From assembly GCF_963853765.1 (NCBI RefSeq), contig NC_088857.1, positions 9,796,001-9,860,000 on the forward strand: DNA of 64,000 bases, given 5' to 3'. Made by a program: the position numbers and the translations under genes. Below are positions 418 to 45,600 of this stretch, piece after piece. The first letter of the stretch is position 1. Each line of letters starts with the position of its first letter. A model generated the notes under the pieces. The model had not been told where the DNA came from, searched no databases, and saw only the letters and a program-made list of their open reading frames with translations. Source of the DNA: Magallana gigas. Its lineage: Eukaryota.

Positions 418-2264
418 CTCCATGAGCAGACGACTGATGACAAATGCAGTGGAAGTGTTCACAGCTGGCTCCCTGGTTGGAGGAACACACATGCGATGTA
501 CAGTCTGCGTCGTTATGACACCCTATTAAAAATATAGTACTTAAAATCAAAGTATTGCAATAATTTTGTTATGATTGTGGTGCTTTTTGATATGTGCAGC
601 ACGCTGTTCTATTGTTTGCCCATTCAATCGTTGACGCTCTCTGCTATAATGCTAGATCATAAATATTTGAAAATAATCTTGGCGATTTTACTATAAACAT
701 ATCAACTATATTCATGTAGCAAATACACAGATATAAATTCGCGTCGACTGATATGGTAAAAGTGTGTTTATAGCTTAAGATATCAACACTCTGAAGGGGT
801 TTAGGTCACGATTGGAAATACTAGTAATAAGGCCAAATTGATTACAGTTTTAATGCCATATGTAATAGATACCAGACTAAGTAATAAGGTCCTGACATTT
901 AAAGTTTTAGACAATCTATACTGACGAATGAAAGATTTGGCGTATACCAAATCAAAAGATTGTGCGTGTGTGTGTGTACGTCTGTCTCACCGTTTGAAAC
1001 AGCATCTCTTCGTAATCCCTGGACCCCATCTGTGAACGAAAATGTCATAAAACATAATGAGATTTTTTCGATAAGAATTCTGTACTCAGTGGCACATGTT
1101 AAAAATCAGCGTAAGAATATAAAATGAACTGGTTTTTTTTATTACGATAATGAAAAAAAAGGTGCAGCAATATTAACAAATATGGTCTGCCTGCTAAGAT
1201 TGATATGAAAGTCGTGTATTTGTAACTATTTCATATAGTAATTATTGCTCAAGAAAACCAAACTTAAAGATCGTTTTAGATCCAATCAACAGTATTTATT
1301 GGTTTTACAGCTTGAAAAAGAAAATAAAAAAACTCTAAAACGTATGAAGGACATGATATTATTCAAAATCTCATAAGTTATAAATTCATAGTCTAAATTT
1401 CAGTACCAAAAACATGTGAGAAAAATTTTGCCATGTTCGCTAACACTTTGTCGTTACAAAATTCTTTGCTGCTAAAATTGCATATATTTTTCGGAAATTG
1501 TACAAAGTAATGTTTTGTGGTGTTTGTTTATTAAAGCAGTTGCAGATTTGTTCGTTTGTTTGTTTGTTTGTTTTTTTGTAAAAAAGTTTTTCGAATGAAG
1601 AATTCACAAAATGTGTCATGCTTAGTGTGCTGCAGCACCTTGCATCGAAAATATCCTATGGTAGCAAAATAAAAATCGCAAAATTTGCAAAAATATCATA
1701 TCGTACTTCGCGTGTTAAATTTTTCACTAAAACAATAATGTCAGTAAATGTTCAATTACAATTAAAGCAACCAGTTTACCAGCACCATGAAATGATGTCA
1801 ACTTTGTCAACAGTAAATGAGAGAAACCTTCATTACATTGCATCCAACCAGTTATATTACTCCACCAAACAACTATGCATATAATTTATATACGGTCTTG
1901 GAATTGATTTTTGTAATAATGTATTGCTGTCATCAACAAATACGTGTAATAACGTATTGCTGTCATCAACAAATACGCGTAATAACGTATTTCTGTCATC
2001 AACAAATACGCGTAATAACATATTGCTGTCATCAACAAATACAGGTAATAAAAAGCTCATTTCCTAGCTTTCTTTCTCGGTTTTTCATCTAAATTAGTTC
2101 ACATACCTTCTTGATATTCCCTGATGGCCAAGGACAGACATCCTGTGACTAAATGAGAAAAAGACGAATTCAGTTATCTTTGCTAACACGAACGGATTGT
2201 AAATATTGGCATATATTTTACGGTTTGACTTACCAAGGAAAAAAGCGACATATATTCTCAACAT
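1..2264 (-). CDS. Secreted mucin-like protein, 5' part: signal peptide, short propeptide, 6-Cys module, His/Gly linker, Thr/Ser/Pro/Gln-rich region; continues off the left edge
   Basis: Exons 2264-2234, 2148-2107, 1029-991, 522-418 and 270-<1 are all joined by phase-1 GT-AG introns. They give MLRIYVAFFLVTGCLSLAIREYQEDGVQGLRRDAVSNGCHNDADCTSHVCSSNQGASCEHFHCICHQSSAHGVSVNHTTHSHGGHGHTTTTTELPTTPLPSTTQASTTLPTTTTQQSTTPSPSTTQSSTTLPTTTTQ..., with no stop to position 1. Confidence 0.82.
353..413. repeat. Compound (CA)n(CT)n microsatellite in a mucin intron
   Basis: Directly visible; it produces the spurious SLSL/RERE ORFs. Confidence 0.97.
1914..2052. repeat. 33-bp minisatellite, about 4 copies (GTAATAACGTATTGCTGTCATCAACAAATACGC), intronic
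   Basis: Four near-identical tandem units are visible. Confidence 0.93.
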
Positions 2265-2470
2265 TCTGGCCAAGGGGTTATGATAAGAATTTGGTCACCT
2301 TGAGCCAATTATTCAATCTCTCTTGACATTACGGGGATAAAGAAAGCACCTTCATCTTAACAACATTTTGCTGAAACCAGGGTCTAAAATATGTGAAAGA
2401 TCGCTATTCATTTCGAATTCCTTCATATGCTCAATTTTTGTAAATTGTTGACCATAATCAAATCTAACAC

Positions 2471-5400
2471 ATGGTCAGTCAAAAAAAGATAGAGTTACAC
2501 GTTTACAAAACCACACTCTTATAAATTCAATGCGAGATCGAACTCTGTACATATTATTCAATATCTTGAACAGATTCTGCGACATTTTAGAAGCTGGGCT
2601 GCAGACTATCAGGTAACTTGGCGACAGTCCACCTGTCGAAGAATTTACCTGATTTACTGACCGCACGCTGTATCTCTCTTGTTTACAGACAACACTGTGT
2701 GAATAAGGACAGTGCACCTCTCGACATCGAATGAACGAATGGGTTATTGTCTTTGTTTCCAGACATGTTAGAGGCGCCGCATCAGTACAAGTATCTTTTA
2801 GATAAAACAGATCAGTAATTTAATATAACATATCAGTATTATATTAAAAAAGCTATATGGTTTTAATTCTGTAAAAACTAACTGATATTACATCAAATTA
2901 AGTTGATAATTTTACATTTTAATCATATGATTGCTATCATCCTTATTTTAAAAAAATGGTAAAGAGAACTAGGAGACGAAGAAATTTACAAATATTTTAT
3001 GGTCTGTAAAATCAAAGACTTGGATTCATAGACATTGGAAGGTTTGAGAAGCTTACACATTTTTATAATTTAACAACACAACGATTTGAAAACTACACTG
3101 CTTAATATACTGTAATTTCCTTTCAAAAGTGCAGGAGATAAAGCAGCATTTCATGGCCTGGTGTTGATCGTGGTTCTTTGACAAATAGTAAATACCAAAA
3201 TTTGTAGACATTCAATGCACAAGATGCGCGGATCTAGTGGGCAATTGGCCTGGAGAGTCTAAATTCACACTTGTTTAATTAACGTTTCCGAAAAGAGGTA
3301 TTGGAACCACCCCTCCTATCCCCACCCCAACCTTTGCAATTAGAATTAGCCTTCCACCACTCCCCCCCCCCCCCAATCTAGGGGGTCTGGATCTGTGCAT
3401 GTAACTAAGCCAGGTTTTTTAAAATATGTAATCACTTTGACAACGTTCTTGAAAACTGGGGAGTCGCATAGATTAACCATCTTGGCTAGCTAAGGGTGAC
3501 GATCCACGGTGTTTCTCTATTCACAATATTTCTAGTTCTACTGCAGTATTCATTTTGTGCAAAGTAGTCGGAACCGGTGGGGGGGGGGGTGTAGGCGGGA
3601 CTGAGACCCCCCCCCCCCCCACACACACACACACACTTGGTTAGACCTAACCATCAGTCACATAGCATCAAGGAGGGACCAGCCCCCCCCCCCCCCCCCC
3701 CCACACACAAAAACACTTTTTATCGCAGCAAGCATAATTTTTCCTTAAAATGAAGTATCAGGAAGCTGCCCACCGCCCCCACATTTTCGGAAGAATGTAA
3801 GGAATTGAAATGAAAATAGAAATATTAACATCACCCTTGGCTACTGAAGATAAAATAACATGACCGAACAAATTAAGCTACTCCCTCCTGTTGATTATTC
3901 TAAAATAAATCACCGTCTTTTCCTAACTTTGATTTTCGGGGGCGCACCGGATCAAAACCTATTATTAATAAATTTTAGAGTTATCCCCCTTATTAAAGAA
4001 CTCTTCTTGAATGTAAATATCGTCTGCACATTGTGGCATCAGGTACGTGTGAATATATTAAAGTTGTAAATCAGTAATACATGATAACTTCTCATTCATA
4101 ATAGGGTTAATGAATCAAAGGTTTCATTCAAAATAGGGTTAATGAATCAAAGGTTTCATCCATATTAGGATTAATGTATCAAAGGTTTCACAAAAGTCAT
4201 GCTAAAGATAACTTGATTAATTAAACCAAAGATGACAGATGCTTACAGTTACAGTTCAGTAACGTTAGGCCTTTCGTAATTTTTTTGTACTGTATAACAT
4301 TACAAACGTACCACAAAACCTATAGATATTTGGTTTTAACTTATGCAAAATGTTGGCTTTAGAGTCACTGAAAAAGTGGTTCGACGGTGGTCAGTAAAAG
4401 TCTTTTTTAAAAAGTTTTTTTTTTCTCGGAGATGGGGGTGGTATGTTGTGTTTGTTTTGAATTTGTTTTGAGAAGAAAATGTCCTGGGTCCGGGTCAATA
4501 AAACACAAGTACTTAATTAATATATTTGTTGTTTTTATATTTTAGCTTCCTTTTCTTGATGCAGAAGACAGATTTCAGAACGTTGCAGAAAGAAGAAAAC
4601 GGTGAGGAAGATAATGATGCATACACACACGACACACCCAAGAAAAGACGTACAGTTGATGTAATTATACTTGCTTATAAATGTTATAATCGAAAAGAAA
4701 ATGTGCTATAAGAGCTTTTATATTCATCATCCAGTTTTAAAATCAAATTCCAAGTAGAATACAATAATCAATTGTGCGGAGCCCCTGTAAAGCTATAAAA
4801 TTATTGAAATTAGTCAGACATCTCGTTACATAAAAATGGAGAATGAAAAGTGTTGATTAAAGAGGGAAATATTTGCATGCAAATGTACTGTAAAGGTGTG
4901 CAGTTGTATGTGTTTATTTCAGAAAGAAGGTTTTGTGACACCAACAACCCCTGACATACCGAAATCATCCCCTTATTACCAGTGCGATGACAGAAACAGT
5001 CTCCTTACCACACCCGACATAGCTGAAGGTAAGGATGTCGAGCGCACCTGTCCATTGGCAAGTGCTTAGCAGCGTTTCCAGCGAGAGAACAAATTAATTA
5101 CACTGTTCTTTAATTTTTGCTCTCTGATTTAAGGATAATTTCTCTGCGACAACTCCAATTAACGTTGATATTGTTTCTTATGAGATGCATACAATAGATT
5201 AGGACTGTTTTAAATTGTAATTGTATACCAACATCTTCACGTGAAATCTTTTTATTCAGGGTCTGGTGAACTCTTCGGTGACAATTTTTTGACGTTGTAT
5301 CCGACGTTCTTACCTTCTGAAACGTCCGAAGATCTCTCTAATTCTGAGATACAGAATGAAGAGAACTATGAGTCCAATACGGAAACTCAGTTTAATCAAC

Positions 5401-5731
5401 CATCTAAAGATTCATTAAATATAGGCTCAATGTCGTCACAATCAGCTGAAATGACGACACCGTCAACCGAGGCAACAGACGACAGTTCAGAAAGGGAAGA
5501 TTCTGAGGGGTCGCCTCAAAGCATTTATGATGACTTGAGCATTGCTGACTTAATTAAAGGTGATGTTCGATTTGGATTTTTGCATTAAGAAATATATCCT
5601 TAATATACGGATAGCATTTTTCTCTGTATATATGAGAGATAATAAATAGATTGGGTTACTTTCAGACATGAGTGAGAAGTCAATGAAAGTTTACATGCAC
5701 TGGATGGAATTATTTCGGTAATAACAATTGA

Positions 5732-5794
<63 letters not shown>

Positions 5795-5982
5795 AAACAA
5801 TTTAACATATTCCACACGTTCTTTATAGAGATGGAGAAAAGTTTGAAGAGGGCGTCCCTTCTCTTATCGATGAGTTACTGAATCAGGCTAAGCGGATAGA
5901 GGAGGATCTTATAGAACAGAAAGAGGCCCTTCGTCAGAGGATCTACAGAATCACGCAGACTCTGCGGGTGGATGACCTTTAA
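2471..5982 (+). CDS. Uncharacterised acidic protein with a basic NLS-like motif and a C-terminal TEX12-like coiled-coil helix
   Basis: Phase-consistent exons: (ATG 2471-2473?), 2574-2612, 2689-2698, 2763-2790, 3979-4042, 4565-4660, 4923-5028, 5260-5559, 5831-5982. Protein reads ...VIPLIKELFLNVNIVCTLWHQKTDF...TPKKRRTVDKEGFVTP...(S/E/T-rich)...IDELLNQAKRIEEDLIEQKEALRQRIYRITQTLRVDDL*. AATAAA at 6121. The 5' microexons and the last acceptor (needs the weaker GAG at 5830) are uncertain. Confidence 0.65.
3224..3401. mobile_element. Short MITE-like element with ATGCGCGGATCYAG-type terminal inverted repeats
   Basis: atgcgcggatctag ... ctggatctgtgcat; a related copy lies at 32035-32202. Confidence 0.55.
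4099..4190. repeat. About 30-bp tandem repeat, 3 copies (ATAGGGTTAATGAATCAAAGGTTTCA core)
   Basis: Directly visible; the third copy is diverged. Confidence 0.85.
5737..5791. repeat. (CT)n microsatellite
   Basis: Directly visible. Confidence 0.97.
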
Positions 5983-6506
5983 AACTACTACTGTGGCAGC
6001 GGCCCCATTATACTGTAAATTAATCGGATTCTATACTGATTGGTTTGTGTTTTAGCGTTAACTAAACGAAATGATTCTACAATCTCTGTTTTATCATGAC
6101 ATGAAAGTCCTAATAATTAAAATAAATTTGTCTGCTTATCTTTATAAAGTCTGAGAAGTTCTTTTATCGTAATTGTACAAAAGAAAATTTAAAAGACTTG
6201 ATTGTCATATTTTATTAAAATTACAAAGCTATAACAAAGTTGATGAACATCACTGACAACTAGGTCAAGATTGTTCATCATGCATTTTTCAAGTAAGTGC
6301 TTTAAAATGAAATATTCATGTATAATTATGTGAAATCAAATTATGTCGAAAATATAATAAATTCAAAAAGATTAGCATATTCTTGCAAACATCTTAGTTC
6401 TAATAAAAAGTATTAATATGGACAGTACATTTTAGAAATGTATGGAAAAATTAAAGTCTCGTTTCTCAAGTAAAGTAGCGTACGTTTAAATAGGTCGTCA
6501 TGGTGC

Positions 6507-9500
6507 TCACGTCCCTTCTGAACTTTCACACACGAAAGGAAGTTCCACTGAATTGTTTGTCACATAGTAGGAGTAATCTCGTTCTGGTATCCACTGCCAC
6601 TCTCCGTTTCTGTATGTCAATATCAAACCCACTGATCGGTTGCCTGTTCTAGCTTTAAGGTCACGTGACCAGTTCGTATAAGTCACATGTGTATGGTCAT
6701 TATTTATCCACGATTTATCTCGTGTGTAGTATATACTCCCTATCCGTGCGTTTAAAGATCCATTTGGAAAATCGTTTTCTAGAATAGAAAAAATGATTTA
6801 TTTTTATTATTTCATTTTACGTTAAAGAAGACAAGACTGATATTTTAATTTGGTGCCTCACCAGGATTGATTTTCTCAATATCGAGCCATTTTCCGTAAG
6901 ACGTCCCATACCAGACCAACAGTTCATTGTTAGGATGGACGTCTTTAATTGTGTAGTAGAATTTCTTGGACCCACAGTTGAATGTGTCTGTATTTTCCTC
7001 GAATGCATTTCTGGCACAATTAACATATCGCAACCAGTTACTTATGTTCTCATTTTTACCGTCTATGAACAGCTTACGTGGACCAGAATCTATCTTAAAA
7101 TAACAACAAAATAAAATATGTGAAAGATGAAATTATTGCTCCATTAACTAGAAATTTGCGATTCATTGTTTCAAAATACTACACGTCTTACTTGCCAGCA
7201 ATAAGTAAAGTCTGTTGGGTTTTCGACAAATTCTCCCTCATATTCATCAAGAATAGTATGTTTGGGTACGAATGCGTCAGCCCACACGCCCATGTTAGCT
7301 CGCGGGATGAGTGACCGCCGGATGGAGAATCCTGGGGGAGTCGTCAGTTGCGCCCTGTTGGGGAGACTCGGGGAGATCTGAGGATGGGATGCATGGTGTT
7401 AATGATGCTATGAACATCAGAGACAGAAATCCGGTGTCATGGTAATGCGTGAACAGTCTTACCTCGTTCTTTCTTAAAACATTTAATGTGCTCTGTTCCA
7501 GCGTACCCTCGAAATAATGCTTACAATCTGAAAACAGAGCATGGAGATGATTTTTCATATATCAAATATTTACATTTTTTTGCCCACTTATATAAAACAA
7601 GTTCAATTTTCGCGAAAAAAAGTGATAATGTTCTATCTGTACATACATACATTCTAAGATCAATGCAAAACTCACACTCTCTTTCCATTTTTTTCTTCTC
7701 TCGCATAAGATATTCTTCCTGTAAAATATACTGTGGCGTTAAGAAAAGTTAAATACAATTTTCCGGTAGTTTTATATCCAACGGTTAATCATTGTATATT
7801 TTACCTCGTGTTTAAGGTGGATAAAATCTGTGTTGTCAAATATCCTGTCTTTATTTCCTGAAAAAAAAAAAGATACCGGCTCAAGGCTTTAAATCAAGTT
7901 ACGCATCATGCGTTAATATTTGATAAAATTAAAAATAAACAGCAACATATATTCAGTTGTAATGCATAACAAAGTAACCCCTTTTCTAAAGTCGAGATGG
8001 ATTTTCAAGACAAAATTTAATTTAGTACACCAGTCAAAATCTTGTTGATGCAAAATTAATAGTAGATTCATTGACTAATTTTTGTATAACTCTATGGTTT
8101 TGTTATAAGATTACGTTCAATGACTTACTATGAAGATACCCAGCAATGAAACTCTCTTCCTCCTTCGAGTTAATCACTGCAAGATAACCTCCCTCTTGAT
8201 GACACACATATGACGCATCGTCACGTGACTTTTTCTCCGGATGGAAGCTGTAACAATGATTGGTCCATTTCAGAGAGTGATGGCCGCCACATTCTGCTGT
8301 ATGAATCGAACACACTGTTTGCAATAAAGATTCGAATACATGATTAGTTGGCATTAATAATATCAATGTCTTAAAGTTATTCCATTCTCGTAAGTTAATA
8401 TATATTCAAAACGACACTGACCTAATGAACCTATGAAAAGAAATGAAAGGATCCTTTTCTCGTTGAGCTTTGGCATGACTGGAACCTTACTGCTTTTTGG
8501 GTAGTTCTATAGGATGTAAACATGTAAAAAAAAAAAAAGTACTTAACAAATCTTAGAATTACTTAAATAAAGAAATACATGTTAAAGCATCAGAGATCTA
8601 TTTCTCCTTACCAATTTAAATACGTTTCAACCTGTAATAAGCGATACGATTAATATATATGTATATGCCCTTATTATAAATATCTTTTTTTCTGAGAAAG
8701 ATTAAGAGTGTAAATTTTCGATCTATTTTTATTTTCAACATTATAACAAATTCTTATTTTTTCCATAAATCATTAATTTATTTCCTGAGTCATGCGCTGA
8801 TTCGACAAAACGATTGATGATTCCTGCTTTCACAAAAAAAAATATAACGCACAAGGTCGCATAAACCTTGCAAAAGCTTGCAATTTTTATATAATATGAT
8901 GTGTTTGTCGTTAACGCCCCTCCGTGTTTGACAGGAGTGTGGGATCATACCATACCACACACGAAAACATCAAAGCGAAAACATGCGGTTAAATAAACAT
9001 GTTTATTTATTTGAAGAATATTCATTGAGTAGAATTGTACCAATCAAAGATAGCAGTTGGATACCACGTTCTTTCCTTGTTCTCAATTGTTTTTTTTCTT
9101 TTCTTATAAAGTGTTTCTTAACAAGATTGTTGAAGCTATGAGCAATAATGGTTAATGAATACCATATACATGTATTAATTAATCCAGCACCCAGTAATAC
9201 AAATATTTACAGTGTTTTTGTGTCACCATCCCTCCCACCACTTATATTTTCGGCGCTTTAATCTTGCGATTTTGTTTCATTTCTCTGTTCACTGTTTTTT
9301 CCTGTTGTTTTTCAACACAGTCTTTTGGGTTCTTGTTTTTTTTTATGTTTTTTTTTGAAAGAGGGATTGTTAATTTTGCTTTTGTTTTTGATTTCACATT
9401 CCAAATGTTTAAACTATTCAATCAATTATCTATCTGTACATAATTAGAGAAGTTTGATTTGATATATATAATTATGATTAACATTTTATTACTAACTTCG

Positions 9501-9601
9501 GTATTTATTTGTTCTGCATTTTCTAGAACTAAGGTAAAATAACAGAATAAACAGAAAAGCAATGCACATACTGTATGAGTTTTGTGTGTTGTACAGAACA
9601 T
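6507..9601 (-). CDS. C-type lectin-domain protein with a PR/SET (PRDM7/9-like) methyltransferase domain inserted within the lectin fold, about 347 aa
   Basis: Exons 9601(or 9528)-9497, 8506-8491, 8296-8129, 7527-7463, 7377-7192, 7093-6862 and 6778-6507 chain in one frame (1044 nt from ATG 9601). CTL N-half: ECGG..NHCYSF..KKSRDDASYVCHQEGGYLAVINSKEEESFI. PR/SET: PNRAQLTTPPGFSIRRSLIPRANMGVW..EYEG..DGKNENISNWLRYVNCAR..EEN..KFYYTIKDVHPNNELLVWYGTSYG. CTL C-half: ARIG..YTNW..GLILTY..GEWQW..PFVCES. The first exon is ambiguous (alternative 10069-10036). Confidence 0.88.
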
Positions 9602-11138
9602 TTTGTGTATGTATAGTACAATCATTTAGTACATTCTAATACAGATAGTGGCCTTTAATTAGAAATGAAGTCAAGGTCGGCAATGAACACATAAGCAGAC
9701 TTATCAAGGGCTCATTTACGTCATGATAATAGAATACGGACATTATGTACAATACTATAACTCCTACCACTCTTCGAAGATACGAACGTCCACCCTCCGA
9801 CAGCAAACTACATGATTTCTTCACAGTGAATTTAATTCTACACCACGTTCTTTCAATAAAGTTTAAATCATATCTTTATCAATATAATTAAAAAAAATTA
9901 AAACACTTCAATTTTATAAAGGATTTTTTTTTACTGAATTCTTTTTTATGTATTTATTCCATTAATTGATTGTTTTTGACCTAGTATATATTGTATAGAA
10001 GTAATTCATAAAATTAAAACAAGAGTAAAACTTACTGTTGATCAAAGCATTAGCCCATAAAGTAGTCATCTAACACTATACAGCAGAAAAAGTTGACATA
10101 AGAAAGGTTATTGAAGATGGATCGATCGTTCATACTTCTATACCGTCGTGACTCAGTCATGTAAACCGCTTAAATTCTACAGCTATAAATACACAGTAAA
10201 ATTGATTGAATGTTCATTATTAAATTTTAGCGGTTATTTTTTGACGCTTTGTATAGTTAAGCTATTAATACTTCTTGTTACCAGAATAAGTACGATTAAG
10301 CTTGCAGACGACACATGATTGCCCCAGTTGTCATTTGTCGTGTCACTCTCGATCCCTGAACTTCCGGTGGGTCACATCTACGTCCAATATTCCAGCACCA
10401 CCGGGCACGAAACCTTTAATCTTTGTTATAATTTTAGATCTTAGAGAAATTCACTATATCTATGGTGTTTGTGATGCGTTTCTCCGGTTTTGTTGTTTCG
10501 TTGTATTTTTTTGTTTTGTTTTTTTGCATAACTGTGTCTTTTACTATTCTAGTAATTAACAATTTTTAATTGTCACTAAGTCCATAGTCATGACTTTGGA
10601 CTCACCGACAATGAAAAATTGTTAATAAGTAAAAGACAATCGTATAGCAAGACACAAGCCACTGTGCATCACACTGCTGCCTCAGTAGGAGTTTCCGGGG
10701 ACACGAGATGCGTTTATCCAAATATCATACCTGCGATATCGACGCGTGTGCGATATATTTCTAAAATCATGGTTCCAGAAGTTGAGTAAATTAATCAGAA
10801 AAGTAAGTCTCAATGCTAAAGTGATTAACGAATGATAAGATATCTGTTCAACAATGCCTTCTTTCTTTTACTTCTAAAAGGTGATACAGATTATCTGCAA
10901 AACTTCAAAATATTGTATCGGCTCATATTAACTGCCATTAGTTGCAATCTGTGTGTCTTATGAATTATTTACCTCTATTCATTGTTCCTATCTTAACTTA
11001 TTAACAAATTTGCTGTTTTGGGTTATAGATTTATTGATGAAAATATTTTAAAGAACTGTGTAGGCTAACTTCGAAAGCTGTATGACAGATGATGATACAT
11101 CCCCCATCCCACACTAACGCACTGCTTGATCTCTAACC

Positions 11139-11508
11139 GCTTCCTGGGCTGCGTTCAAGATTGTAGCTGCTACGTTCGGCTACGCTGTTGAGCGGTAAGT
11201 TTACCTAGCCTAACCTAGTAGATATTAGTATAGCCTATATATTTTATGCTAAGCAGAAAATTCGAGATGGCCACATGTATAACCACGTAGCAATAAACAT
11301 AAAATCTCTTTGCTTAGTGATGTTTTGTTCATCCTATAAGTTATAATGAATTTTAACAAGTACATATCAAACTTTGTCGATGTAATCAGTCTTTAGTTGA
11401 AAATTTCTAACTTAATTCAAATCTGAGACCTAGCGGTCCGTTCAATAGACCTAGATATCTACGACCTAGTGGCTAGGCTAGCTGCTACGATCATGAGCGC
11501 AGCCCTGG
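11139..11508. mobile_element. MITE-like element with ~30-bp imperfect TIRs (GGGCTGCG.. termini, possibly PIF/Harbinger-like)
   Basis: Left ctgggctgcgttcaagattgtagctgcta; reverse complement of the right end is ccagggctgcgctcatgatcgtagcagcta. Superfamily assignment is tentative. Confidence 0.6.
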
Positions 11509-12844
11509 ACACCTCGGCGTAGTGTACGTCATGGTAACTATGACAACAAATGAAAAACAATCATCTATATATGATTTATTTTCTCTTATAGGTAAACATA
11601 ATTACACCAACTTTATGAATTAATGACAATAATAGATTTCAACTTGTAATTTAAGGCATTACCAAATATTTCTCTCAATAAAGCAAAGGACTTGTTGTAA
11701 AATACAGTGTCATTATAATTACGCAGGTAAACATTCACCGTTTTAATAAGTAACAAGAATTTGCTGACTTTTACACGTGAAGTCTTGAAATTAGGCTACA
11801 TATCTGCTTATTTTTTTTTTTTTACATAAATCCTCGAAATACATACTGTCTGAAATCTAAAAGTATACAAGTCTTATTATAATTGTATAAACTTATGTTT
11901 CTATTAAGTATTTCAGATTCACATTTCATATTCAAGCAGTTGTACATTATCACTTATTTCCAACTTTTTTTCCATGAACAAATTACAAAAATGAGACATG
12001 GGTATATACAAAATTGTGTCATTCAAAAACTAAGCACACGGAACACGTTGAATAAACATGTTTAATTTCACTTGCAGGTTCTTTGATTACATAATATATG
12101 ATTCTAACAACAATGCCAAAACTCAATATTACACAGAGTGCATAAGAAATGACATCAGAATACGCCCAATTTACAAAACACACGCAGAGCATGGATATTG
12201 AAATGATATAGTGAATGAGAAACAATGACTAGAGAAAACGTCTACTAGAGATGCCATAAAATGTGATAGTACATCATGGAGAGGGGAGGGTACCTGGAAC
12301 TACCTGCCCTCAAACCCATCACCCCCAGGCAGAAATCTTCCACCTAGAGTTCACCCAATACAATAGAACCACAATTGTTACCATCAAATTAAGATTTTGT
12401 GACATTAAACAACTGATACATTAAAACAGATCGATCTTGTTTCAATAATTCAAAACAAGTTCTCTGAATTTCTTTTAATTGCGATGTGAAAAATATGGCT
12501 TATGGGGGAATACCCAACTTTCTGCTGAGTAAGAAAGTTATTGTGTCACTGTGATGAAACAAAACTGATTCATACGTAAATTATGCCTTTTAACCTTGCA
12601 CTCAAAATGCATTTTGATGATCTTGATATTCATTCTTGAACTGACTATTTGTCAACTACATGTAGAAAGAAGGGATGTAATTCAATGTTGTTTGCATCTT
12701 TTACCAGGATGACAACCTGCAACCATAATCAAGGTCAAATGTTGAAATTGCTAACGACTGACTTCAAAGGCAACAAAGTCTATGCTATTATAGTAGGATT
12801 AAAAGCTGTCAATGTGACAGCATACTGCGTTTTCATTTCTGTGA

Positions 12845-39600: not shown

Positions 39601-42600
39601 CACCACAACTGAGGCCACCACTACCTCAACAGCGGAAACGACTACAACTACAACAAGTACTCCAGAGACGACTTCGACAAGTACGTCTACAACCACAGCT
39701 TTGCCAACGAGCACAAGCACAACTGTGGCCCCAACTACTTCATCAACAACACTGAGCAGCACTGCAAGTACAAGTACGGAGAGTAGCAGCACTTCTACTA
39801 GTACTCCATCCAGTACAACAACTGAGGCTCCTTCTACTTTAGCAGAACAAATGACTACTACCACAACCCCAGAAAGTACAACAGCTTCTACAAGCACCAC
39901 CACGCCTTCAACGACAACCACCACTCAGGTTCCATCTACAACAACTGAAAGTAGCACAACAACAACAAGTACACAACCCCCAACGAGTACAAGCACAACA
40001 ACTGAGGCCACCACTACCTCAACAACGGAAACGACTACAACTACAACAACTACTCCAGAGACGACTTCGACAAGTACGTCTACAACCACAGCTTTGCCAA
40101 CGAGCACAAGCACAACTGAAGCCCCAACTACTTCATCAACAACACTGAGCAGCACTGCAAGTACAAGTACGGAGAGTAGCAGCACTTCTACTAGTACTCC
40201 ATCCAGTACAACAACTGAGGCTCCTTCTACCACAACCGAACAAATGACTACTACCACAACCCCAGAAAGTACAACAGCTTCTACAAGCACCACCACGCCT
40301 TCAACGACAACCACCACTCAGGTTCCATCTACAACAACTGAAAGTAGCACAACATCAACAAGTACACAGCCCCCAACGAGTACAAGCACCACAACTGAGG
40401 CCACCACTACCTCAACAACAGAAACGACTACAACTACAACAAGTACTCCAGAGACGACTTCAACAAGTACGTCTACAACCACAGCTTTGCCAACGAGCAC
40501 AAGCACAACTGAAGCCCCAACTACTTCATCAACAACACTGAGCAGCACTGCAAGTACAAGTACGGAGAGTAGCAGCACTTCTACTAGTACTCCATCCAGT
40601 ACAACAACTGAGGCTCCTTCTACTTTAGCAGAACAAATGACTACTACCACAACCCCAGAAAGTACAACAGCTTCTACAAGCACCACCACGCCTTCAACGA
40701 CACCCACCACTAAGGTTCCATCTACAACAACTGAAAGTAGCACAACATCAACAAGTACACAACCCCCAACGAGTACAAGCACCACAACTGAGGCCACCAC
40801 TACCTCACCAACGGAAACGACTACAACTACAACAAGTACTCCAGAGACGACTTCGACAAGTACGTCTACAACCACAGCTTTGCCAACGAGCACAAGCACA
40901 ACTGAAGCCCCAACCACTTCATCAACAACACTGAGCAGCACTGCAAGTACAAGTACGGAGAGTAGCAGCACTTCTACTAGTACTCCATCCAGTACAACAA
41001 CTGAGGCTACTTCTACCACAACCGAACAAATGACTACTACCACAACCCCAGAAAGTACAACAGCTTCTACAAGCACCACCACGCCTTCAACGACAACCAC
41101 CACCCAGGTTCCATCTACAACAACTGAAAGTAGCACAACATCAACAAGTACACAACCCCCAACGAGTACAAGAACCACAACTGAGGCCACCACTACCTCA
41201 CCAACGGAAACGACTACAACTACAACAAGTACTCCAGAGACGACTTCGACAAGTACGTCTACAACCACAGCTTTGCCAACGAGCACAAACACAACTGAAG
41301 CCCCAACTACTTCATCAACAACACTGAGCAGCACTGCAAGTACACGTACGGAGAGTAGCAGCACTTCTACTAGTACTCCATCCAGTACAACAACTGAGGC
41401 TCCTTCTACCACAACCGAACAAATGACTACTACCACAACCCCAGAAAGTACAACAGCTTCTACAAGCACCACCACGCCTTCAACGACAACCACCACTCAG
41501 GTTCCATCTACAACAACTGAAAGTAGCACAACATCAACAAGTACACAACCCCCAACGAGTACAAGCACCACAACTGAGGCCACCACTACCTCACCAACGG
41601 AAACGACTACAACTACAATAAGTACTCCAGAGACGACTTCGACAAGTACGTCTACAACCACAGCTTTGCCAACGAGCACAAGCACAACTGAAGCCCCAGC
41701 TACCTTATCAACAACACTGAGCAGCACTGCAAGTACAAGTACGGAGAGTAGCAGCACTTCTACTAGTACTCCATCCAGTACAACAACTGAGGCTCCTTCT
41801 ACCACAACCGAACAAATGACTACTACCACAACCCCAGAAAGTACAACAGCTTCTTCAAGCACCACCACGCCTTCAACGACAACCACCACTCAGGTTCCAT
41901 CTACAACAACTGAAAGTAGCACAACAACAACAAGTACACAACCCCCAACGAGTACAAGCACCACAACTGAGGCCACCACTACCTCAACAACGGAAACGAC
42001 GTCAACTACAACAAGTACTCCAGAGACAACTTCGACAAGTATGTCTACAACCACAGCTTTGCCAACGAGCACAAGCACAACTGAAGCCCCAACTACTTCA
42101 TCAACAACACTGAGCAGCACTGCAAGTACAAGTACGGAGAGTAGCAGCACTTCTACTAGTACTCCATCCAGTACAACAACTGAGGCTCCTTCTACTTTAG
42201 CAGAACAAATGACTACTACCACAACCCCAGAAAGTACAACAGCTTCTACAAGCACCACCACGCCTTCAACGACAACCACCACTCAGGTTCCATCTACAAC
42301 AACTGAAAGTAGCACAACATCAACAAGTACACAACCCCCAACGAGTACAAGCACCACAACTGAGGCCACCACTACCTCACCAACGGAAACGACTACAACT
42401 ACAACAAGTACTCCAGAGACGACTTCGACAAGTACGTCTACAACCACAGCTTTGCCAACGAGCACAAGCACAACTGAAGCCCCAACTACTTCATCAACAA
42501 CTCTGAGCAGCACTGCAAGTACAAGTACGGAGAGTAGCAGCACTTCTACTAGTACTCCATCCAGTACAACAACTGAGGCTCCTTCTACCACAACCGAACA

Positions 42601-45600
42601 AATGACTACTACCACAACCCCAGAAAGTACAACAGCTTCTACAAGCACCACCACGCCTTCAACGACAACCACCACTCAGGTTCCATCTACAACAACTGAA
42701 AGTAGCACAACATCAACAAGTACAGAACCCCCAACGAGTACAAGCACCACAACTGAGGCCACCACTACCTCAACAACGGAAACGACTACAACTACAACAA
42801 GTACTCCAGAGACGACTTCGACAAGTACGTCTACAACCACAGCTTTGCCAACGAGCACAATCACAACTGAAGCCCCAACTACTTCATCAACAACACTGAG
42901 CAGCACTGCAGGTACAAGTACGGAGAGTAGCAGCACTTCTACTAGTACTCCATCAAGTACAACAACTGAGGCTCCTTCTACTTTAGCAGAACAAATGAGT
43001 ACTACCACAACTCCAGAAAGTACAACAGCTTCTACAAGCACCACCACGCCTTCAACGACAACCACCACTCAGGTTCCATCTACAACAACTGAAAGTAGCA
43101 CAACATCAACAAGTACACAACCCCCAACGAGTACAAGCACCACAACTGAGGCCACCACTACCTCAACAGCGGAAACGACTACAACTACAACAAGTACTCC
43201 AGAGACGACTTCGACAAGTACGTCTACAACCACAGCTTTGCCAACGAGCACAAGCACAACTGTGGCCCCAACTACTTCATCAACAACACTGAGCAGCACT
43301 GCAAGTACAAGTACGGAGAGTAGCAGCACTTCTACTAGTACTCCATCCAGTACAACAACTGAGGCTCCTTCTACTTTAGCAGAACAAATGACTACTACCA
43401 CAACCCCAGAAAGTACAACAGCTTCTACAAGCACCACCACGCCTTCAACGACAACCACCACTCAGGTTCCATCTACAACAACTGAAAGTAGCACAACAAC
43501 AACAAGTACACAACCCCCAACGAGTACAAGCACAACAACTGAGGCCACCACTACCTCAACAACGGAAACGACTACAACTACAACAACTACTCCAGAGACG
43601 ACTTCGACAAGTACGTCTACAACCACAGCTTTGCCAACGAGCACAAGCACAACTGAAGCCCCAACTACTTCATCAACAACACTGAGCAGCACTGCAAGTA
43701 CAAGTACGGAGAGTAGCAGCACTTCTACTAGTACTCCATCCAGTACAACAACTGAGGCTCCTTCTACCACAACCGAACAAATGACTACTACCACAACCCC
43801 AGAAAGTACAACAGCTTCTACAAGCACCACCACGCCTTCAACGACAACCACCACTCAGGTTCCATCTACAACAACTGAAAGTAGCACAACATCAACAAGT
43901 ACACAGCCCCCAACGAGTACAAGCACCACAACTGAGGCCACCACTACCTCAACAACAGAAACGACTACAACTACAACAAGTACTCCAGAGACGACTTCAA
44001 CAAGTACGTCTACAACCACAGCTTTGCCAACGAGCACAAGCACAACTGAAGCCCCAACTACTTCATCAACAACACTGAGCAGCACTGCAAGTACAAGTAC
44101 GGAGAGTAGCAGCACTTCTACTAGTACTCCATCCAGTACAACAACTGAGGCTCCTTCTACTTTAGCAGAACAAATGACTACTACCACAACCCCAGAAAGT
44201 ACAACAGCTTCTACAAGCACCACCACGCCTTCAACGACACCCACCACTAAGGTTCCATCTACAACAACTGAAAGTAGCACAACATCAACAAGTACACAAC
44301 CCCCAACGAGTACAAGCACCACAACTGAGGCCACCACTACCTCACCAACGGAAACGACTACAACTACAACAAGTACTCCAGAGACGACTTCGACAAGTAC
44401 GTCTACAACCACAGCTTTGCCAACGAGCACAAGCACAACTGAAGCCCCAACCACTTCATCAACAACACTGAGCAGCACTGCAAGTACAAGTACGGAGAGT
44501 AGCAGCACTTCTACTAGTACTCCATCCAGTACAACAACTGAGGCTACTTCTACCACAACCGAACAAATGACTACTACCACAACCCCAGAAAGTACAACAG
44601 CTTCTACAAGCACCACCACGCCTTCAACGACAACCACCACCCAGGTTCCATCTACAACAACTGAAAGTAGCACAACATCAACAAGTACACAACCCCCAAC
44701 GAGTACAAGAACCACAACTGAGGCCACCACTACCTCACCAACGGAAACGACTACAACTACAACAAGTACTCCAGAGACGACTTCGACAAGTACGTCTACA
44801 ACCACAGCTTTGCCAACGAGCACAAACACAACTGAAGCCCCAACTACTTCATCAACAACACTGAGCAGCACTGCAAGTACACGTACGGAGAGTAGCAGCA
44901 CTTCTACTAGTACTCCATCCAGTACAACAACTGAGGCTCCTTCTACCACAACCGAACAAATGACTACTACCACAACCCCAGAAAGTACAACAGCTTCTAC
45001 AAGCACCACCACGCCTTCAACGACAACCACCACTCAGGTTCCATCTACAACAACTGAAAGTAGCACAACATCAACAAGTACACAACCCCCAACGAGTACA
45101 AGCACCACAACTGAGGCCACCACTACCTCACCAACGGAAACGACTACAACTACAATAAGTACTCCAGAGACGACTTCGACAAGTACGTCTACAACCACAG
45201 CTTTGCCAACGAGCACAAGCACAACTGAAGCCCCAGCTACCTTATCAACAACACTGAGCAGCACTGCAAGTACAAGTACGGAGAGTAGCAGCACTTCTAC
45301 TAGTACTCCATCCAGTACAACAACTGAGGCTCCTTCTACCACAACCGAACAAATGACTACTACCACAACCCCAGAAAGTACAACAGCTTCTTCAAGCACC
45401 ACCACGCCTTCAACGACAACCACCACTCAGGTTCCATCTACAACAACTGAAAGTAGCACAACAACAACAAGTACACAACCCCCAACGAGTACAAGCACCA
45501 CAACTGAGGCCACCACTACCTCAACAACGGAAACGACGTCAACTACAACAAGTACTCCAGAGACAACTTCGACAAGTATGTCTACAACCACAGCTTTGCC

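What the first reader, a model, noticed from the sequence alone, without database searches (positions are those of the whole stretch)
6507..8296. PRDM9-type PR/SET methyltransferase domain inserted inside a C-type lectin fold
Seen in sequence: five consecutive phase-consistent exons read CTL first half (through helix 2), a complete PR/SET domain, then the CTL second half (degenerate WIG motif, YTNW, W-x-W, FVCE). This is domain-within-domain, not a simple tandem fusion: the outer CTL Cys pair (YVC / FVC) brackets the whole SET domain. Established knowledge: the PR/SET closely follows the PRDM7/9 pattern and keeps tyrosines at the positions of PRDM9 Y276 (EYEG), Y341 (FYYT) and Y357 (VWYG), but has no KRAB, SSXRD, zinc knuckle or C2H2 array. 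Inference: a chromatin-writer module re-deployed on a lectin scaffold, possibly a lysine methyltransferase or SAM-binding module for non-histone or pathogen targets. I know of no description of this architecture, but I cannot search.
Basis: partly seen in the sequence, partly recalled or inferred. Interest (0 to 1): 0.92.

Follow-up and report, generated by a model that had tools for sequence, protein, structure and literature searches.

The report
Oyster lectin fold carrying nested methyltransferase
This Pacific oyster gene is real and transcribed, and it encodes a protein in which a PRDM9-type lysine-methyltransferase domain sits inside a C-type-lectin-like fold behind a signal-peptide-like leader; databases file this oyster-only family of about 15 genes as "PRDM9/set-17", and no paper I could find describes the architecture.

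Summary
The core observation holds, but the exon map needs correcting. RNA contigs from three studies confirm three of the four predicted junctions. The 8129^7527 junction is wrong: two micro-exons (7857..7805 and 7718..7676, 96 nt, in frame) lie between.

The CTLD exon starts at 8314, not 8296. An upstream exon (8506..8422, ATG at 8476) adds a signal-peptide-like leader. The 363-aa product is identical to RefSeq XP_034337227.2, "histone-lysine N-methyltransferase set-17 [Magallana gigas]".

AlphaFold2 models (pLDDT 84.7 for a 96%-identical allele, 79.2 for a 30%-identical paralogue) show the two lectin halves forming one complete CTLD. For example, 117 of 118 CLEC5A residues align (Z 13.1). 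The inserted residues 107-259 superpose on PRDM9 (Z 18.4).

The tyrosines matching PRDM9 Y276, Y341 and Y357 and the asparagine matching N320 are invariant. dN/dS is about 0.25.

The genome holds 15 such genes, and relatives were found only in oysters (Ostreidae). The true PRDM9-like gene with a zinc-finger array lies elsewhere and shares an intron position with this family, which points to exon shuffling.

The CTLD lacks the EPN/QPD and WND calcium/sugar motifs. Function is inferred only: most likely a lectin-fold-targeted lysine methyltransferase of the secretory pathway.

The parts
10036..10122 (-). 5'UTR exon. It carries an upstream ATG (10069..10067) that opens a 17-codon uORF, which ends at TAA 8489..8487 in the next exon.
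   Evidence: Joint 8506^10036 in an X1 RNA contig. mRNA contigs L020 and L021 of a close relative align to 10122..10036. Sequence read.
8422..8506 (-). Exon with the start codon (ATG 8476..8474). It encodes residues 1-18 of the signal-peptide-like leader (MPKLNEKRILSFLFIGSL) and ends in phase 1.
   Evidence: Sequence. The splice reproduces RefSeq protein P0106 exactly. Colinear mRNA blocks. A hydrophobic 11-mer scores KD 2.56 at residues 9-19.
8129..8314 (-). CTLD N-half exon (residues 19-80): end of the leader, the C27/C39 pair, C56 (SYVC) and both helices. It ends in phase 1.
   Evidence: Pfam Lectin_C positions 2-35 and 2-43, 31.5 bits. RNA contigs cover 8128-8261. The 8314 acceptor comes from P0106/P0035 and mRNA blocks.
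7805..7857 (-). It encodes linker residues after CTLD helix 2.
   Evidence: Joints 7856/7^8128/9 and 7717/8^7804/5 in X1, X2 and X3. AG/GT borders.
7676..7718 (-). It encodes part of the long helix (residues 93-119) leading into the pre-SET region.
   Evidence: Joints 7717/8^7804/5 and 7527^7676 in X1, X2 and X3. AG/GT borders. Helix 93-119 in the model.
7463..7527 (-). Pre-SET exon (YCKHYFEG...), holding the invariant C114, which aligns with the Cys of PRDM9 'EMCQNFF'.
   Evidence: Joints. phmmer alignment to PRDM9 starts at residue 112. C114 is invariant.
7192..7377 (-). PR/SET N-part exon (residues 135-196), holding the GxG-like 'ANMGVW' and Y180 (= PRDM9 Y276). It ends ...YCWQ in phase 0.
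   Evidence: Joints. Alignment to PRDM9. The true PRDM9-like gene on C9 has an intron at the same position.
6862..7093 (-). PR/SET C-part exon (residues 197-273), holding NWLRYVNCAR (N221 = PRDM9 N320), Y242 (= Y341) and ELLVWYG (Y258 = Y357).
   Evidence: Pfam PRDM2_PR E 2.2e-21 and SET E 3.4e-8. PDB PRDM9 E 7.5e-16 with residue alignment. Joints.
6276..6778 (-). Last exon: CTLD C-half (residues 274-363: degenerate WIGL 'ARIGSIYY', YTNW, W-x-W, PFVCE with C357), stop codon 6509..6507, and 3'UTR to about 6276-6295. It starts in phase 1.
   Evidence: RNA contigs cover 6276-6778. The profile of this exon hits the second half of canonical Lectin_C domains. Strands 282-291, 321-330, 333-338 and 353-360 in the model.

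Best explanation
Shown. The locus is one transcribed nine-exon gene of Magallana (Crassostrea) gigas, RefSeq XP_034337227.2, 363 aa. Its layout is:
- residues 1-25: a signal-peptide-like leader
- residues 26-86: the CTLD N-half, with the long-form Cys pair C27/C39 and C56
- residues 87-140: a linker with a long helix that runs into a PRDM9-type pre-SET stretch
- residues 141-268: a complete PR/SET domain with every catalytic-site residue examined intact
- residues 282-360: the CTLD C-half, ending in C357

In the predicted structure the two halves close into one C-type-lectin-like fold, and the methyltransferase domain emerges from the loop between helix 2 and strand 2. The gene belongs to an oyster-restricted family of about 15 genes per genome and is under purifying selection.

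Inferred, origin. A symmetric phase 1-1 cassette of exons taken from the PRDM9-type gene was shuffled into an intron of a CTLD gene before the oyster genera diverged.

Inferred, mechanism. The protein enters the secretory pathway. The PR/SET domain is the conserved constant part and binds SAM to methylate lysines on non-histone targets. The CTLD has lost the Ca2+/sugar motifs and has a variable loop region, so it serves as the targeting or recognition scaffold. This resembles the way the lectin domain of polypeptide GalNAc-transferases steers their catalytic domain (an analogy from general knowledge).
For: One transcript: the X2 contig spans 8198 to 6295 across all junctions, with the same joints in X1 and X3, and mRNA contigs of a relative map in nine colinear blocks. 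The splice is identical to P0106.

PR/SET: Pfam PRDM2_PR E 9e-26. PDB PRDM9 scores E 1.4e-26 against 1.4e-16 for the next PRDM. Foldseek's top hits are PRDM9, and VIA gives Z 18.4. Y180, N221, Y242 and Y258 are invariant in 27 sequences.

CTLD: the Lectin_C N-half hit is above Pfam's cut-off. The C-half profile reaches canonical Lectin_C second halves at whole-library E 1e-5 to 7e-4. Whole CTLDs align across model residues 25-363: SPL-2 131 of 138 residues at Z 13.3, CLEC5A 117 of 118 at Z 13.1. The same holds for a 30%-identical paralogue.

Family: there are 15 SET plus C-half loci and no C-half without a SET exon. The layout and Cys pattern are conserved in all subfamilies.

Selection: dN/dS is 0.24-0.26 overall and 0.18 in PR/SET.

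Origin: the true PRDM9-like gene with a zinc-finger array is on C9 and has the same intron position, YxWQ|I.

Leader: 12 of 13 members scanned have an N-terminal hydrophobic stretch before the first CTLD cysteine.

The variable loop region (25% identity, 24-39 residues) contrasts with the conserved PR/SET (51% identity).
Against: No enzymatic, SAM-binding, localisation or ligand data exist. The signal peptide was judged by hydrophobicity and by eye, not with a dedicated predictor. A SET enzyme outside the cytosol or nucleus needs a SAM supply that is not established for animal secretory compartments. The nested fold is a prediction from shallow alignments (27-31 sequences), and I could not inspect coordinates to check the C56-C357 distance or access to the active site. 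The inner CTLD disulfide and the WIGL motif are missing or degenerate. The dN/dS values rest on only about 56-59 substitutions.
Confidence: 0.55

Rival explanations
1. A secreted or membrane-proximal recognition protein in which the PR/SET domain no longer catalyses anything. It would serve as a peptide-, lysine- or SAM-binding surface or as a structural module, as proposed for several PRDM PR domains without detectable activity (general knowledge).
For: The same architectural evidence applies. SAM availability outside the cytosol is doubtful. The pre-SET zinc-knuckle cysteines of PRDM9 are reduced to a single Cys, C114. The post-SET segment is short and runs straight into the CTLD.
Against: The catalytic tyrosine triad and the SAM-contacting asparagine are invariant across all subfamilies. 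PR/SET is the most conserved part of the protein (51% mean pairwise identity) and has dN/dS of 0.18. That pattern is what an active site under constraint looks like.
Confidence: 0.25
2. An intracellular, possibly nuclear, histone methyltransferase, as the database names (PRDM9, PRDM7-like, set-17) imply. The hydrophobic N-terminus would not be a cleaved signal, and the CTLD would act as a protein-interaction module inside the cell.
For: The closest solved and sequence relatives of the insert are histone H3K4/K36 methyltransferases. The signal peptide has not been tested. One relative's transcript keeps an upstream ORF in frame with the main ATG, giving a 24-aa N-terminal extension (P0114).
Against: An N-terminal hydrophobic stretch precedes the CTLD in 12 of 13 members scanned. 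The conserved cysteines C27/C39 and C56/C357 are those that form disulfides in extracellular CTLDs. There is no DNA-binding or chromatin-reader domain. In the window's allele the upstream ORF stops 11 nt before the main ATG. The genome has a separate true PRDM9-like gene with a zinc-finger array.
Confidence: 0.15
3. An annotation or assembly artefact: a SET gene nested in the intron of a lectin gene, or a decaying chimeric pseudogene.
For: Pfam does not recognise the C-terminal half on its own. Contig coverage of 8262-8421 was missing in the three runs laid.
Against: Single RNA contigs join the lectin and SET exons in three studies. Full-length 363-366-aa ORFs occur on 1.2-1.4-kb mRNA contigs. 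The same layout appears in 15 paralogues and six oyster species. dN/dS is about 0.25.
Confidence: 0.03

Closest known systems
PRDM9/PRDM7 PR/SET domain (PDB 4C1Q, 4IJD, 6NM4)
   Same: It is the best sequence and structure match to residues 107-268: E 1.4e-26, Z 18.4, 34-38% identity. The match includes the pre-SET stretch. The tyrosines at Y276, Y341 and Y357 and the asparagine at N320 are kept, and an intron lies at the same position as in the oyster's own PRDM9-like gene.
   Different: There is no KRAB, SSXRD, pre-SET zinc knuckle (only one Cys remains), ZF1 or C2H2 array. The domain is embedded in a CTLD behind a leader peptide. It is not the PRDM9 orthologue, which lies on C9 at 42.92 Mb.
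C. elegans SET-17 (a PRDM9-like SET protein without zinc fingers; the source of the RefSeq name)
   Same: It is a PRDM9-like PR/SET domain without a zinc-finger array (general knowledge; the name appears).
   Different: To my knowledge SET-17 is a chromatin-associated protein of spermatocytes with no lectin fold and no leader. Orthology was not tested here and is unlikely, given the oyster-restricted distribution.
Bivalve and vertebrate C-type lectin-like domains (e.g. SPL-2 of Saxidomus, 6A7S; codakine, 2VUZ; CLEC5A, 2YHF)
   Same: The whole fold aligns across the two halves: Z 12.9-13.3 with 117-131 residues aligned. The long-form N-terminal Cys pair and the C1-C4 pair are present.
   Different: A guest segment of about 195 residues is inserted between helix 2 and strand 2. 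The inner C2-C3 disulfide is absent, and so are the EPN/QPD and WND Ca2+/sugar motifs. The WIGL motif is degenerate.
Polypeptide GalNAc-transferases with a ricin-type lectin domain (a functional analogy from general knowledge)
   Same: A transferase domain is joined to a lectin-type fold in a secretory-pathway protein, and the lectin steers substrate choice.
   Different: The folds, the chemistry (glycosyl versus methyl transfer) and the topology (tandem versus nested) all differ. No relationship was tested.
SMYD methyltransferases (SET domain split by a MYND insertion; general knowledge)
   Same: They are a nested-domain architecture that involves a SET domain.
   Different: The roles are reversed. 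In SMYD proteins the SET domain is the host that is split; here it is the intact guest and the CTLD is split.
Secreted bacterial SET-domain effectors (e.g. Legionella LegAS4, 8SWI)
   Same: The SET fold is exported from the producing cell. 8SWI appears among the structural matches at Z 10.0.
   Different: These are bacterial type IV effectors that act on host chromatin. They have no lectin scaffold and no evolutionary link to this PRDM9-derived insert.

Membership tests
C-type lectin-like domain (CTLD fold, Pfam PF00059) | Match to the Lectin_C profile above the curated cut-off | tested here: inconclusive
   P0035 scores 31.5 bits against a cut-off of 22.6, but only profile positions 2-43 of 107 are matched. 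The C-half alone gives no Pfam hit. However, a profile of C-halves hits the second half of canonical Lectin_C domains at E 1e-5 to 7e-4 in 1.84 billion proteins.
C-type lectin-like domain (CTLD fold, Pfam PF00059) | Double-loop alpha/beta fold with two helices and strands 1-5 | tested here: met
   Two AlphaFold2 models (pLDDT 84.7 and 79.2) align to whole solved CTLDs across residues 25-363: CLEC5A 117 of 118 residues at Z 13.1, SPL-2 131 of 138 at Z 13.3, LLT1 103 of 108 at Z 11.7. This is prediction, not experiment.
C-type lectin-like domain (CTLD fold, Pfam PF00059) | Conserved cysteines C1-C4 (helix 1 to strand 5) and C2-C3 (strand 3 to the loop after strand 4) | tested here: not met
   C56 and C357 (C1 and C4) and the long-form pair C27/C39 are invariant. 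Both C2 and C3 are absent in every member: FGLLLTY and W-x-W-x-PE stand in their place. The pairings themselves were not verified.
C-type lectin in the strict sense (Ca2+-dependent carbohydrate binding) | EPN or QPD motif plus WND motif at Ca2+ site 2 | tested here: not met
   No EPN, QPD or WND occurs in any family member. The loop between YTNW and strand 3 is short, variable (24-39 residues) and of low model confidence.
PRDM family / PRDM9 orthologue | PR/SET domain | tested here: met
   PF21549 E 9.4e-26 and PF00856 E 4.4e-9. PRDM9 structures E 1.4e-26 and Z 18.4.
PRDM family / PRDM9 orthologue | C2H2 zinc-finger array (plus KRAB and SSXRD in PRDM9) | tested here: not met
   Eight family members have no zinc-finger, KRAB or SSXRD Pfam hit, and the protein ends with the CTLD. 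The gene with PR/SET plus about 13 C2H2 fingers is on C9 at 42.92 Mb.
Active SET lysine methyltransferase | Catalytic tyrosines (PRDM9 Y276, Y341, Y357) and the SAM-contacting Asn of the N(H/C) motif | tested here: met
   Y180, Y242, Y258 and N221 are invariant in 27 aligned sequences.
Active SET lysine methyltransferase | SAM binding and methyl transfer | not testable with these tools
   This needs recombinant protein and an assay.
Secretory-pathway protein | Cleavable N-terminal signal peptide | tested here: inconclusive
   A hydrophobic 11-mer (KD 1.7-3.0) lies before the first CTLD cysteine in 12 of 13 members. No dedicated predictor or experiment was available.

The most novel reading that the evidence does not exclude
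Oysters make a family of secreted or luminal lysine methyltransferases whose catalytic PRDM9-derived domain is presented on a diversifying lectin-like scaffold. These proteins would methylate extracellular, granule-cargo, gamete or microbial proteins. That would be an enzymatic arm of invertebrate recognition with no known counterpart, and the first animal SET enzyme working outside the cytosol and nucleus.
Probability: 0.25. Interest if true: 0.9.

Novelty: new variant of a known kind. Interest (0 to 1): 0.72.

Why it matters
Both parts are textbook domains, but the combination is not. A chromatin-writer domain, apparently still catalytically competent, has been shuffled as a phase 1-1 exon cassette into a loop of an extracellular recognition fold. 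It was then kept, expanded to about 15 copies and conserved across oyster genera.

This matters in three ways.
1. It is a clean natural case of whole-domain insertion into a CTLD by exon shuffling, with the likely donor gene still in the genome.
2. It raises a testable question: does lysine methylation occur in the secretory pathway or outside cells in animals?
3. It corrects annotation. At least a dozen oyster genes named PRDM9, PRDM7, PRDM12, PRDM16 or set-17 are not PRDM9 orthologues, which affects studies that count or use "PRDM9" in bivalves. The true PRDM9-like gene is on C9.

Tried and rejected
- A per-exon Pfam scan did not recognise the CTLD C-half or the first SET exon alone. I resolved this with a paralogue profile and with structure prediction.
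- I looked for paralogues inside the window with tblastn and found none.
- I hoped some paralogues had fused SET and C-half exons that could serve as a long by-reference query. The apparent single HSPs in L014 and L018 cross stop codons or introns.
I reached the annotated proteins through the exon-9 profile instead.
- Mytilus "PRDM7-like/PRDM7_9" proteins (P0040, P0041) contain SET but no CTLD C-half, so I do not count them as members. P0015 is a bacterial haemolysin-type repeat protein and a spurious profile hit.
- AFDB clusters returned one merged oyster entry (K1RHD7) and otherwise SET-only proteins. No same-architecture entry from another taxon appeared.
The six searches that ran and reading two bivalve CTL surveys found no description of a CTLD-SET protein. 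One search (secreted SET methyltransferases) returned only bacterial or parasite effectors and unrelated papers.
- The "Prdm9" studied in oyster gonads (PMC12111275, LOC105330008) is the C9 zinc-finger gene, not this family. Its qPCR primer sequence occurs in L008.
- Transcripts that skip the SET cassette (a plain lectin isoform) were not seen in the contigs of three runs. Contigs drop rare forms, so this is weak evidence.
- Raw reads of run X20 gave no coverage of the gene, so strand and expression level could not be read.
- Model coordinates are not exposed, so the distances C56-C357 and C114-C236 and the access to the active site could not be measured.
Full report
**1. The observation**

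Spliced as proposed, they give an open 306-aa frame. Scanned one exon at a time, the first matches Pfam Lectin_C positions 2-35 (E 3e-5). The fourth matches PRDM2_PR positions 56-121 (E 2e-21) and SET. The last exon alone matches nothing.

I laid RNA contigs from three independent studies (X1, X2, X3) on window 6100-12000. They confirm joints 6778^6862, 7093^7192 and 7377^7463. They do not show 7527^8129. All three runs pass instead through two micro-exons, 7857..7805 (53 nt) and 7718..7676 (43 nt). Together these add 96 nt, or 32 residues, in frame.

One X2 contig of 1133 nt runs without a mismatch from 8198 in the lectin exon to 6295 in the 3'UTR. The lectin and PR/SET exons therefore belong to one mRNA.

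**2. The full gene**

There is also a coding exon 8506..8422 with an ATG at 8476, and a 5'UTR exon ending at 10036.

Splicing 8476..8422, 8314..8129, 7857..7805, 7718..7676, 7527..7463, 7377..7192, 7093..6862 and 6778..6507 gives 363 aa. This product is identical to P0106, which is RefSeq XP_034337227.2, "histone-lysine N-methyltransferase set-17 [Magallana gigas]". It is 96% identical, without gaps, to UniProt A0A8W8N442.

Two 1301-nt mRNA contigs from a close relative (L020, L021) map to the window in nine colinear blocks that include the 5'UTR exon and the 8422^8314 junction.

The genome is the Pacific oyster. Proteins labelled Magallana gigas sit on contigs whose lengths equal G000:C1 and G000:C2.

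**3. What the parts are**

*PR/SET.* On the whole protein, Pfam gives PRDM2_PR at E 9e-26. Against solved structures, PRDM9 scores E 1.4e-26, ten orders of magnitude better than the next PRDM. The alignment starts in the pre-SET stretch, where EYCKHYF pairs with EMCQNFF. Residue alignments put Y180, Y242 and Y258 on PRDM9 Y276, Y341 and Y357, and N221 on N320. These residues are invariant across 27 aligned sequences. Pfam finds no KRAB, SSXRD or zinc-finger domain.

*CTLD.* The N-half passes the Lectin_C cut-off but covers only profile positions 2-43. I built a profile of the last exon from eight paralogues (A1) and searched it against 1.84 billion representative proteins. It found only 33 proteins. 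The strong hits are family members. The weak ones (E 1e-5 to 7e-4) fall in the second half of canonical Lectin_C domains.

*Structure.* AlphaFold2 on the 96%-identical allele, with a 27-sequence alignment, gave mean pLDDT 84.7 and pTM 0.75. An exhaustive structural comparison then gave two kinds of match:
- Residues 107-259 superpose on PRDM9 (6NM4) at Z 18.4.
- Residues 25-363 superpose on whole CTLDs with nearly every target residue aligned. SPL-2 of the clam Saxidomus aligns 131 of 138 residues (Z 13.3), CLEC5A 117 of 118 (Z 13.1) and codakine 125 of 129 (Z 12.9).

A second model, of a 30%-identical paralogue from the C2 cluster that has no Pfam lectin hit at all, shows the same nested arrangement: PRDM9 at Z 16.6 and CTLDs at Z 11-11.7 spanning residues 26-368.

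The SET domain is inserted between CTLD helix 2 and strand 2, and the pair C56/C357 brackets it.

*What the CTLD lacks.* It has the long-form N-terminal Cys pair (C27/C39). It lacks the inner C2-C3 pair, the EPN/QPD and WND motifs, and a proper WIGL motif. It is therefore a C-type-lectin-like fold, not a demonstrated lectin.

**4. Family and origin**

The genome has at least 20 PR/SET exon matches. Fifteen of them are followed by a C-half exon: nine on C1, five in tandem on C2, and this single copy on C5. No C-half exon lacks a SET exon beside it. N-half exons lie upstream where the fetched loci reach far enough. The annotated proteins of all subfamilies share the leader, the four CTLD cysteines, the linker helix and C114.

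Relatives were found only in Ostreidae: M. gigas, M. angulata, C. virginica, Saccostrea echinata, S. cucullata and Ostrea edulis. They carry the names PRDM9, PRDM9-like, PRDM7-like, PRDM16-like, PRDM12, "PR domain zinc finger protein 2-like", set-17-like or "uncharacterized". The Mytilus hits are SET-only.

The closest non-family SET exon in the genome (47% identity) belongs to a gene on C9. That gene continues into an isolated zinc finger and an array of about 13 C2H2 fingers, so it is the true PRDM9-type gene. Its SET domain is interrupted by an intron at exactly the same place...YAWQ|IYK versus ...YCWQ|IDS.

In the window gene the guest exons 4-8 total 579 nt and are flanked by phase-1 introns on both sides (arithmetic). 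Together these facts point to classical exon shuffling of a PRDM9-derived cassette into a CTLD intron before the oyster genera split. This is inference.

**5. Is it functional?**

Transcripts appear in at least 14 RNA or RNA-like runs from seven studies.

Against the relative's mRNAs, dN/dS is 0.24-0.26 overall, 0.18-0.19 in PR/SET and 0.17-0.19 in the CTLD C-half. These figures rest on about 56-59 substitutions.

Across 13 distinct lineages, PR/SET is the best conserved region (51% mean pairwise identity), followed by CTLD strands 3-5 (45%). The loop between strands 2 and 3 is the most variable within the CTLD: 25% identity, 24-39 residues long, and of low model confidence.

Twelve of 13 members scanned have a strongly hydrophobic N-terminal stretch before the first CTLD cysteine.

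**6. Mechanism (inferred)**

The leader and the disulfide-type cysteines argue for the secretory pathway. The invariant catalytic residues argue for a working SAM-dependent lysine methyltransferase. A degenerate sugar site combined with a variable loop argues that the CTLD is a targeting or recognition scaffold rather than a Ca2+-dependent lectin.

I put about 0.55 on this combined reading. The rivals are a non-catalytic SET used as a binding module (0.25), an intracellular histone methyltransferase as the database names imply (0.15), and an artefact or pseudogene (0.03). The main weakness is that no SAM supply is established for animal secretory compartments, and nothing here tests localisation or activity.

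**7. Comparison and novelty**

The insert works like, and derives from, the PRDM9/7 PR/SET domain. The protein nevertheless fails the PRDM membership test because it has no zinc-finger array, and it is not the PRDM9 orthologue. The host is a CTLD by fold but fails the strict C-type-lectin test.

The gene models are public, and one UniProt entry already lists both Pfam domains. The sequences are therefore not new. None mentions a SET or PR domain in a CTLD protein. The oyster "Prdm9" studied in gonads is the C9 gene.

I rate this a new variant of known kinds: a nested, lineage-specific architecture with an open and testable functional question.

**8. Earlier notes**

One concerns two possible N-termini and the other a phase 1-1 cassette.

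On the first: in this allele the upstream ATG (10069) opens a 17-codon uORF that stops 11 nt before the main ATG. In a relative the frame stays open and gives a 387-aa form (P0114).

On the second: the cassette is indeed symmetric 1-1, but it spans 7857..6862 rather than 7527..6862. No skipping isoform was seen.

Noticed in passing
G000:C9:42918001-42928000 (L019; also L008): This is the oyster's true PRDM9-type gene: PR/SET exons, an isolated zinc finger, then one exon with about 13 tandem C2H2 fingers (ORF 2055..3251, minus strand). It contains the qPCR primer given for 'PRDM9 LOC105330008' in PMC12111275. Many other oyster genes named PRDM9 or PRDM7 are members of the lectin-SET family instead.
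   Followed up: partly
window 10067-10069 to 8487-8489 (minus strand, spliced 10036^8506): A 17-codon upstream ORF in the 5'UTR ends 11 nt before the main ATG. In a close relative's transcript (P0114, L021) the same frame stays open into the main ORF and adds 24 residues ahead of the leader, which could mask the signal peptide.
   Followed up: partly
window 8261 (minus strand): One X1 RNA contig leaves the window sequence at 8261 with no splice signal. It continues with 54 other letters that would read ...PPLACQKKTG before NHCY, an alternative CTLD start. This is probably a divergent allele or paralogue, or a chimeric contig.
   Followed up: no
window residues 1-202 versus 203-363 of the protein (exons at 8476..7075 versus 7074..6507): All 14 amino-acid differences between the window allele and UniProt A0A8W8N442 fall in the first 202 residues. 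The C-terminal 161 residues are identical.
   Followed up: no
window 40318-41496 and 43855-45033 (minus strand); 51322-52107, 56824-57609 and 61147-61932 (minus strand): Two tandem copies of a 392-aa ORF and three tandem copies of a 261-aa ORF. None has a Pfam match. They may be a tandemly duplicated single-exon gene family or a repeat element.
   Followed up: partly
window 11025-12000 (+ strand by first-mate orientation): A strongly covered stretch in RNA runs (summed contig depth up to 58 in X1, plus raw polyA reads in X20), with several loose ends at 11144, 11416 and 11428. It looks like a neighbouring expressed element or repeat unrelated to the lectin-SET gene.
   Followed up: no
window 5728-5800: A (GA)n/(CT)n microsatellite about 500 bp downstream of the mapped 3' end of the gene (~6276) shows up as poly-Glu-Arg and poly-Ser-Leu ORFs.
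   Followed up: no
G000:C1:535001-545000 (L018) and G000:C2:23360001-23370000 (L014): Some family copies look damaged or partial. The SET exon at C1:539720 carries two stops. L018 has an extra lone SET exon at 1055-1261. The C2:23366389 C-half scores only E 7e-7. The count of 15 therefore probably includes pseudogenes.
   Followed up: no
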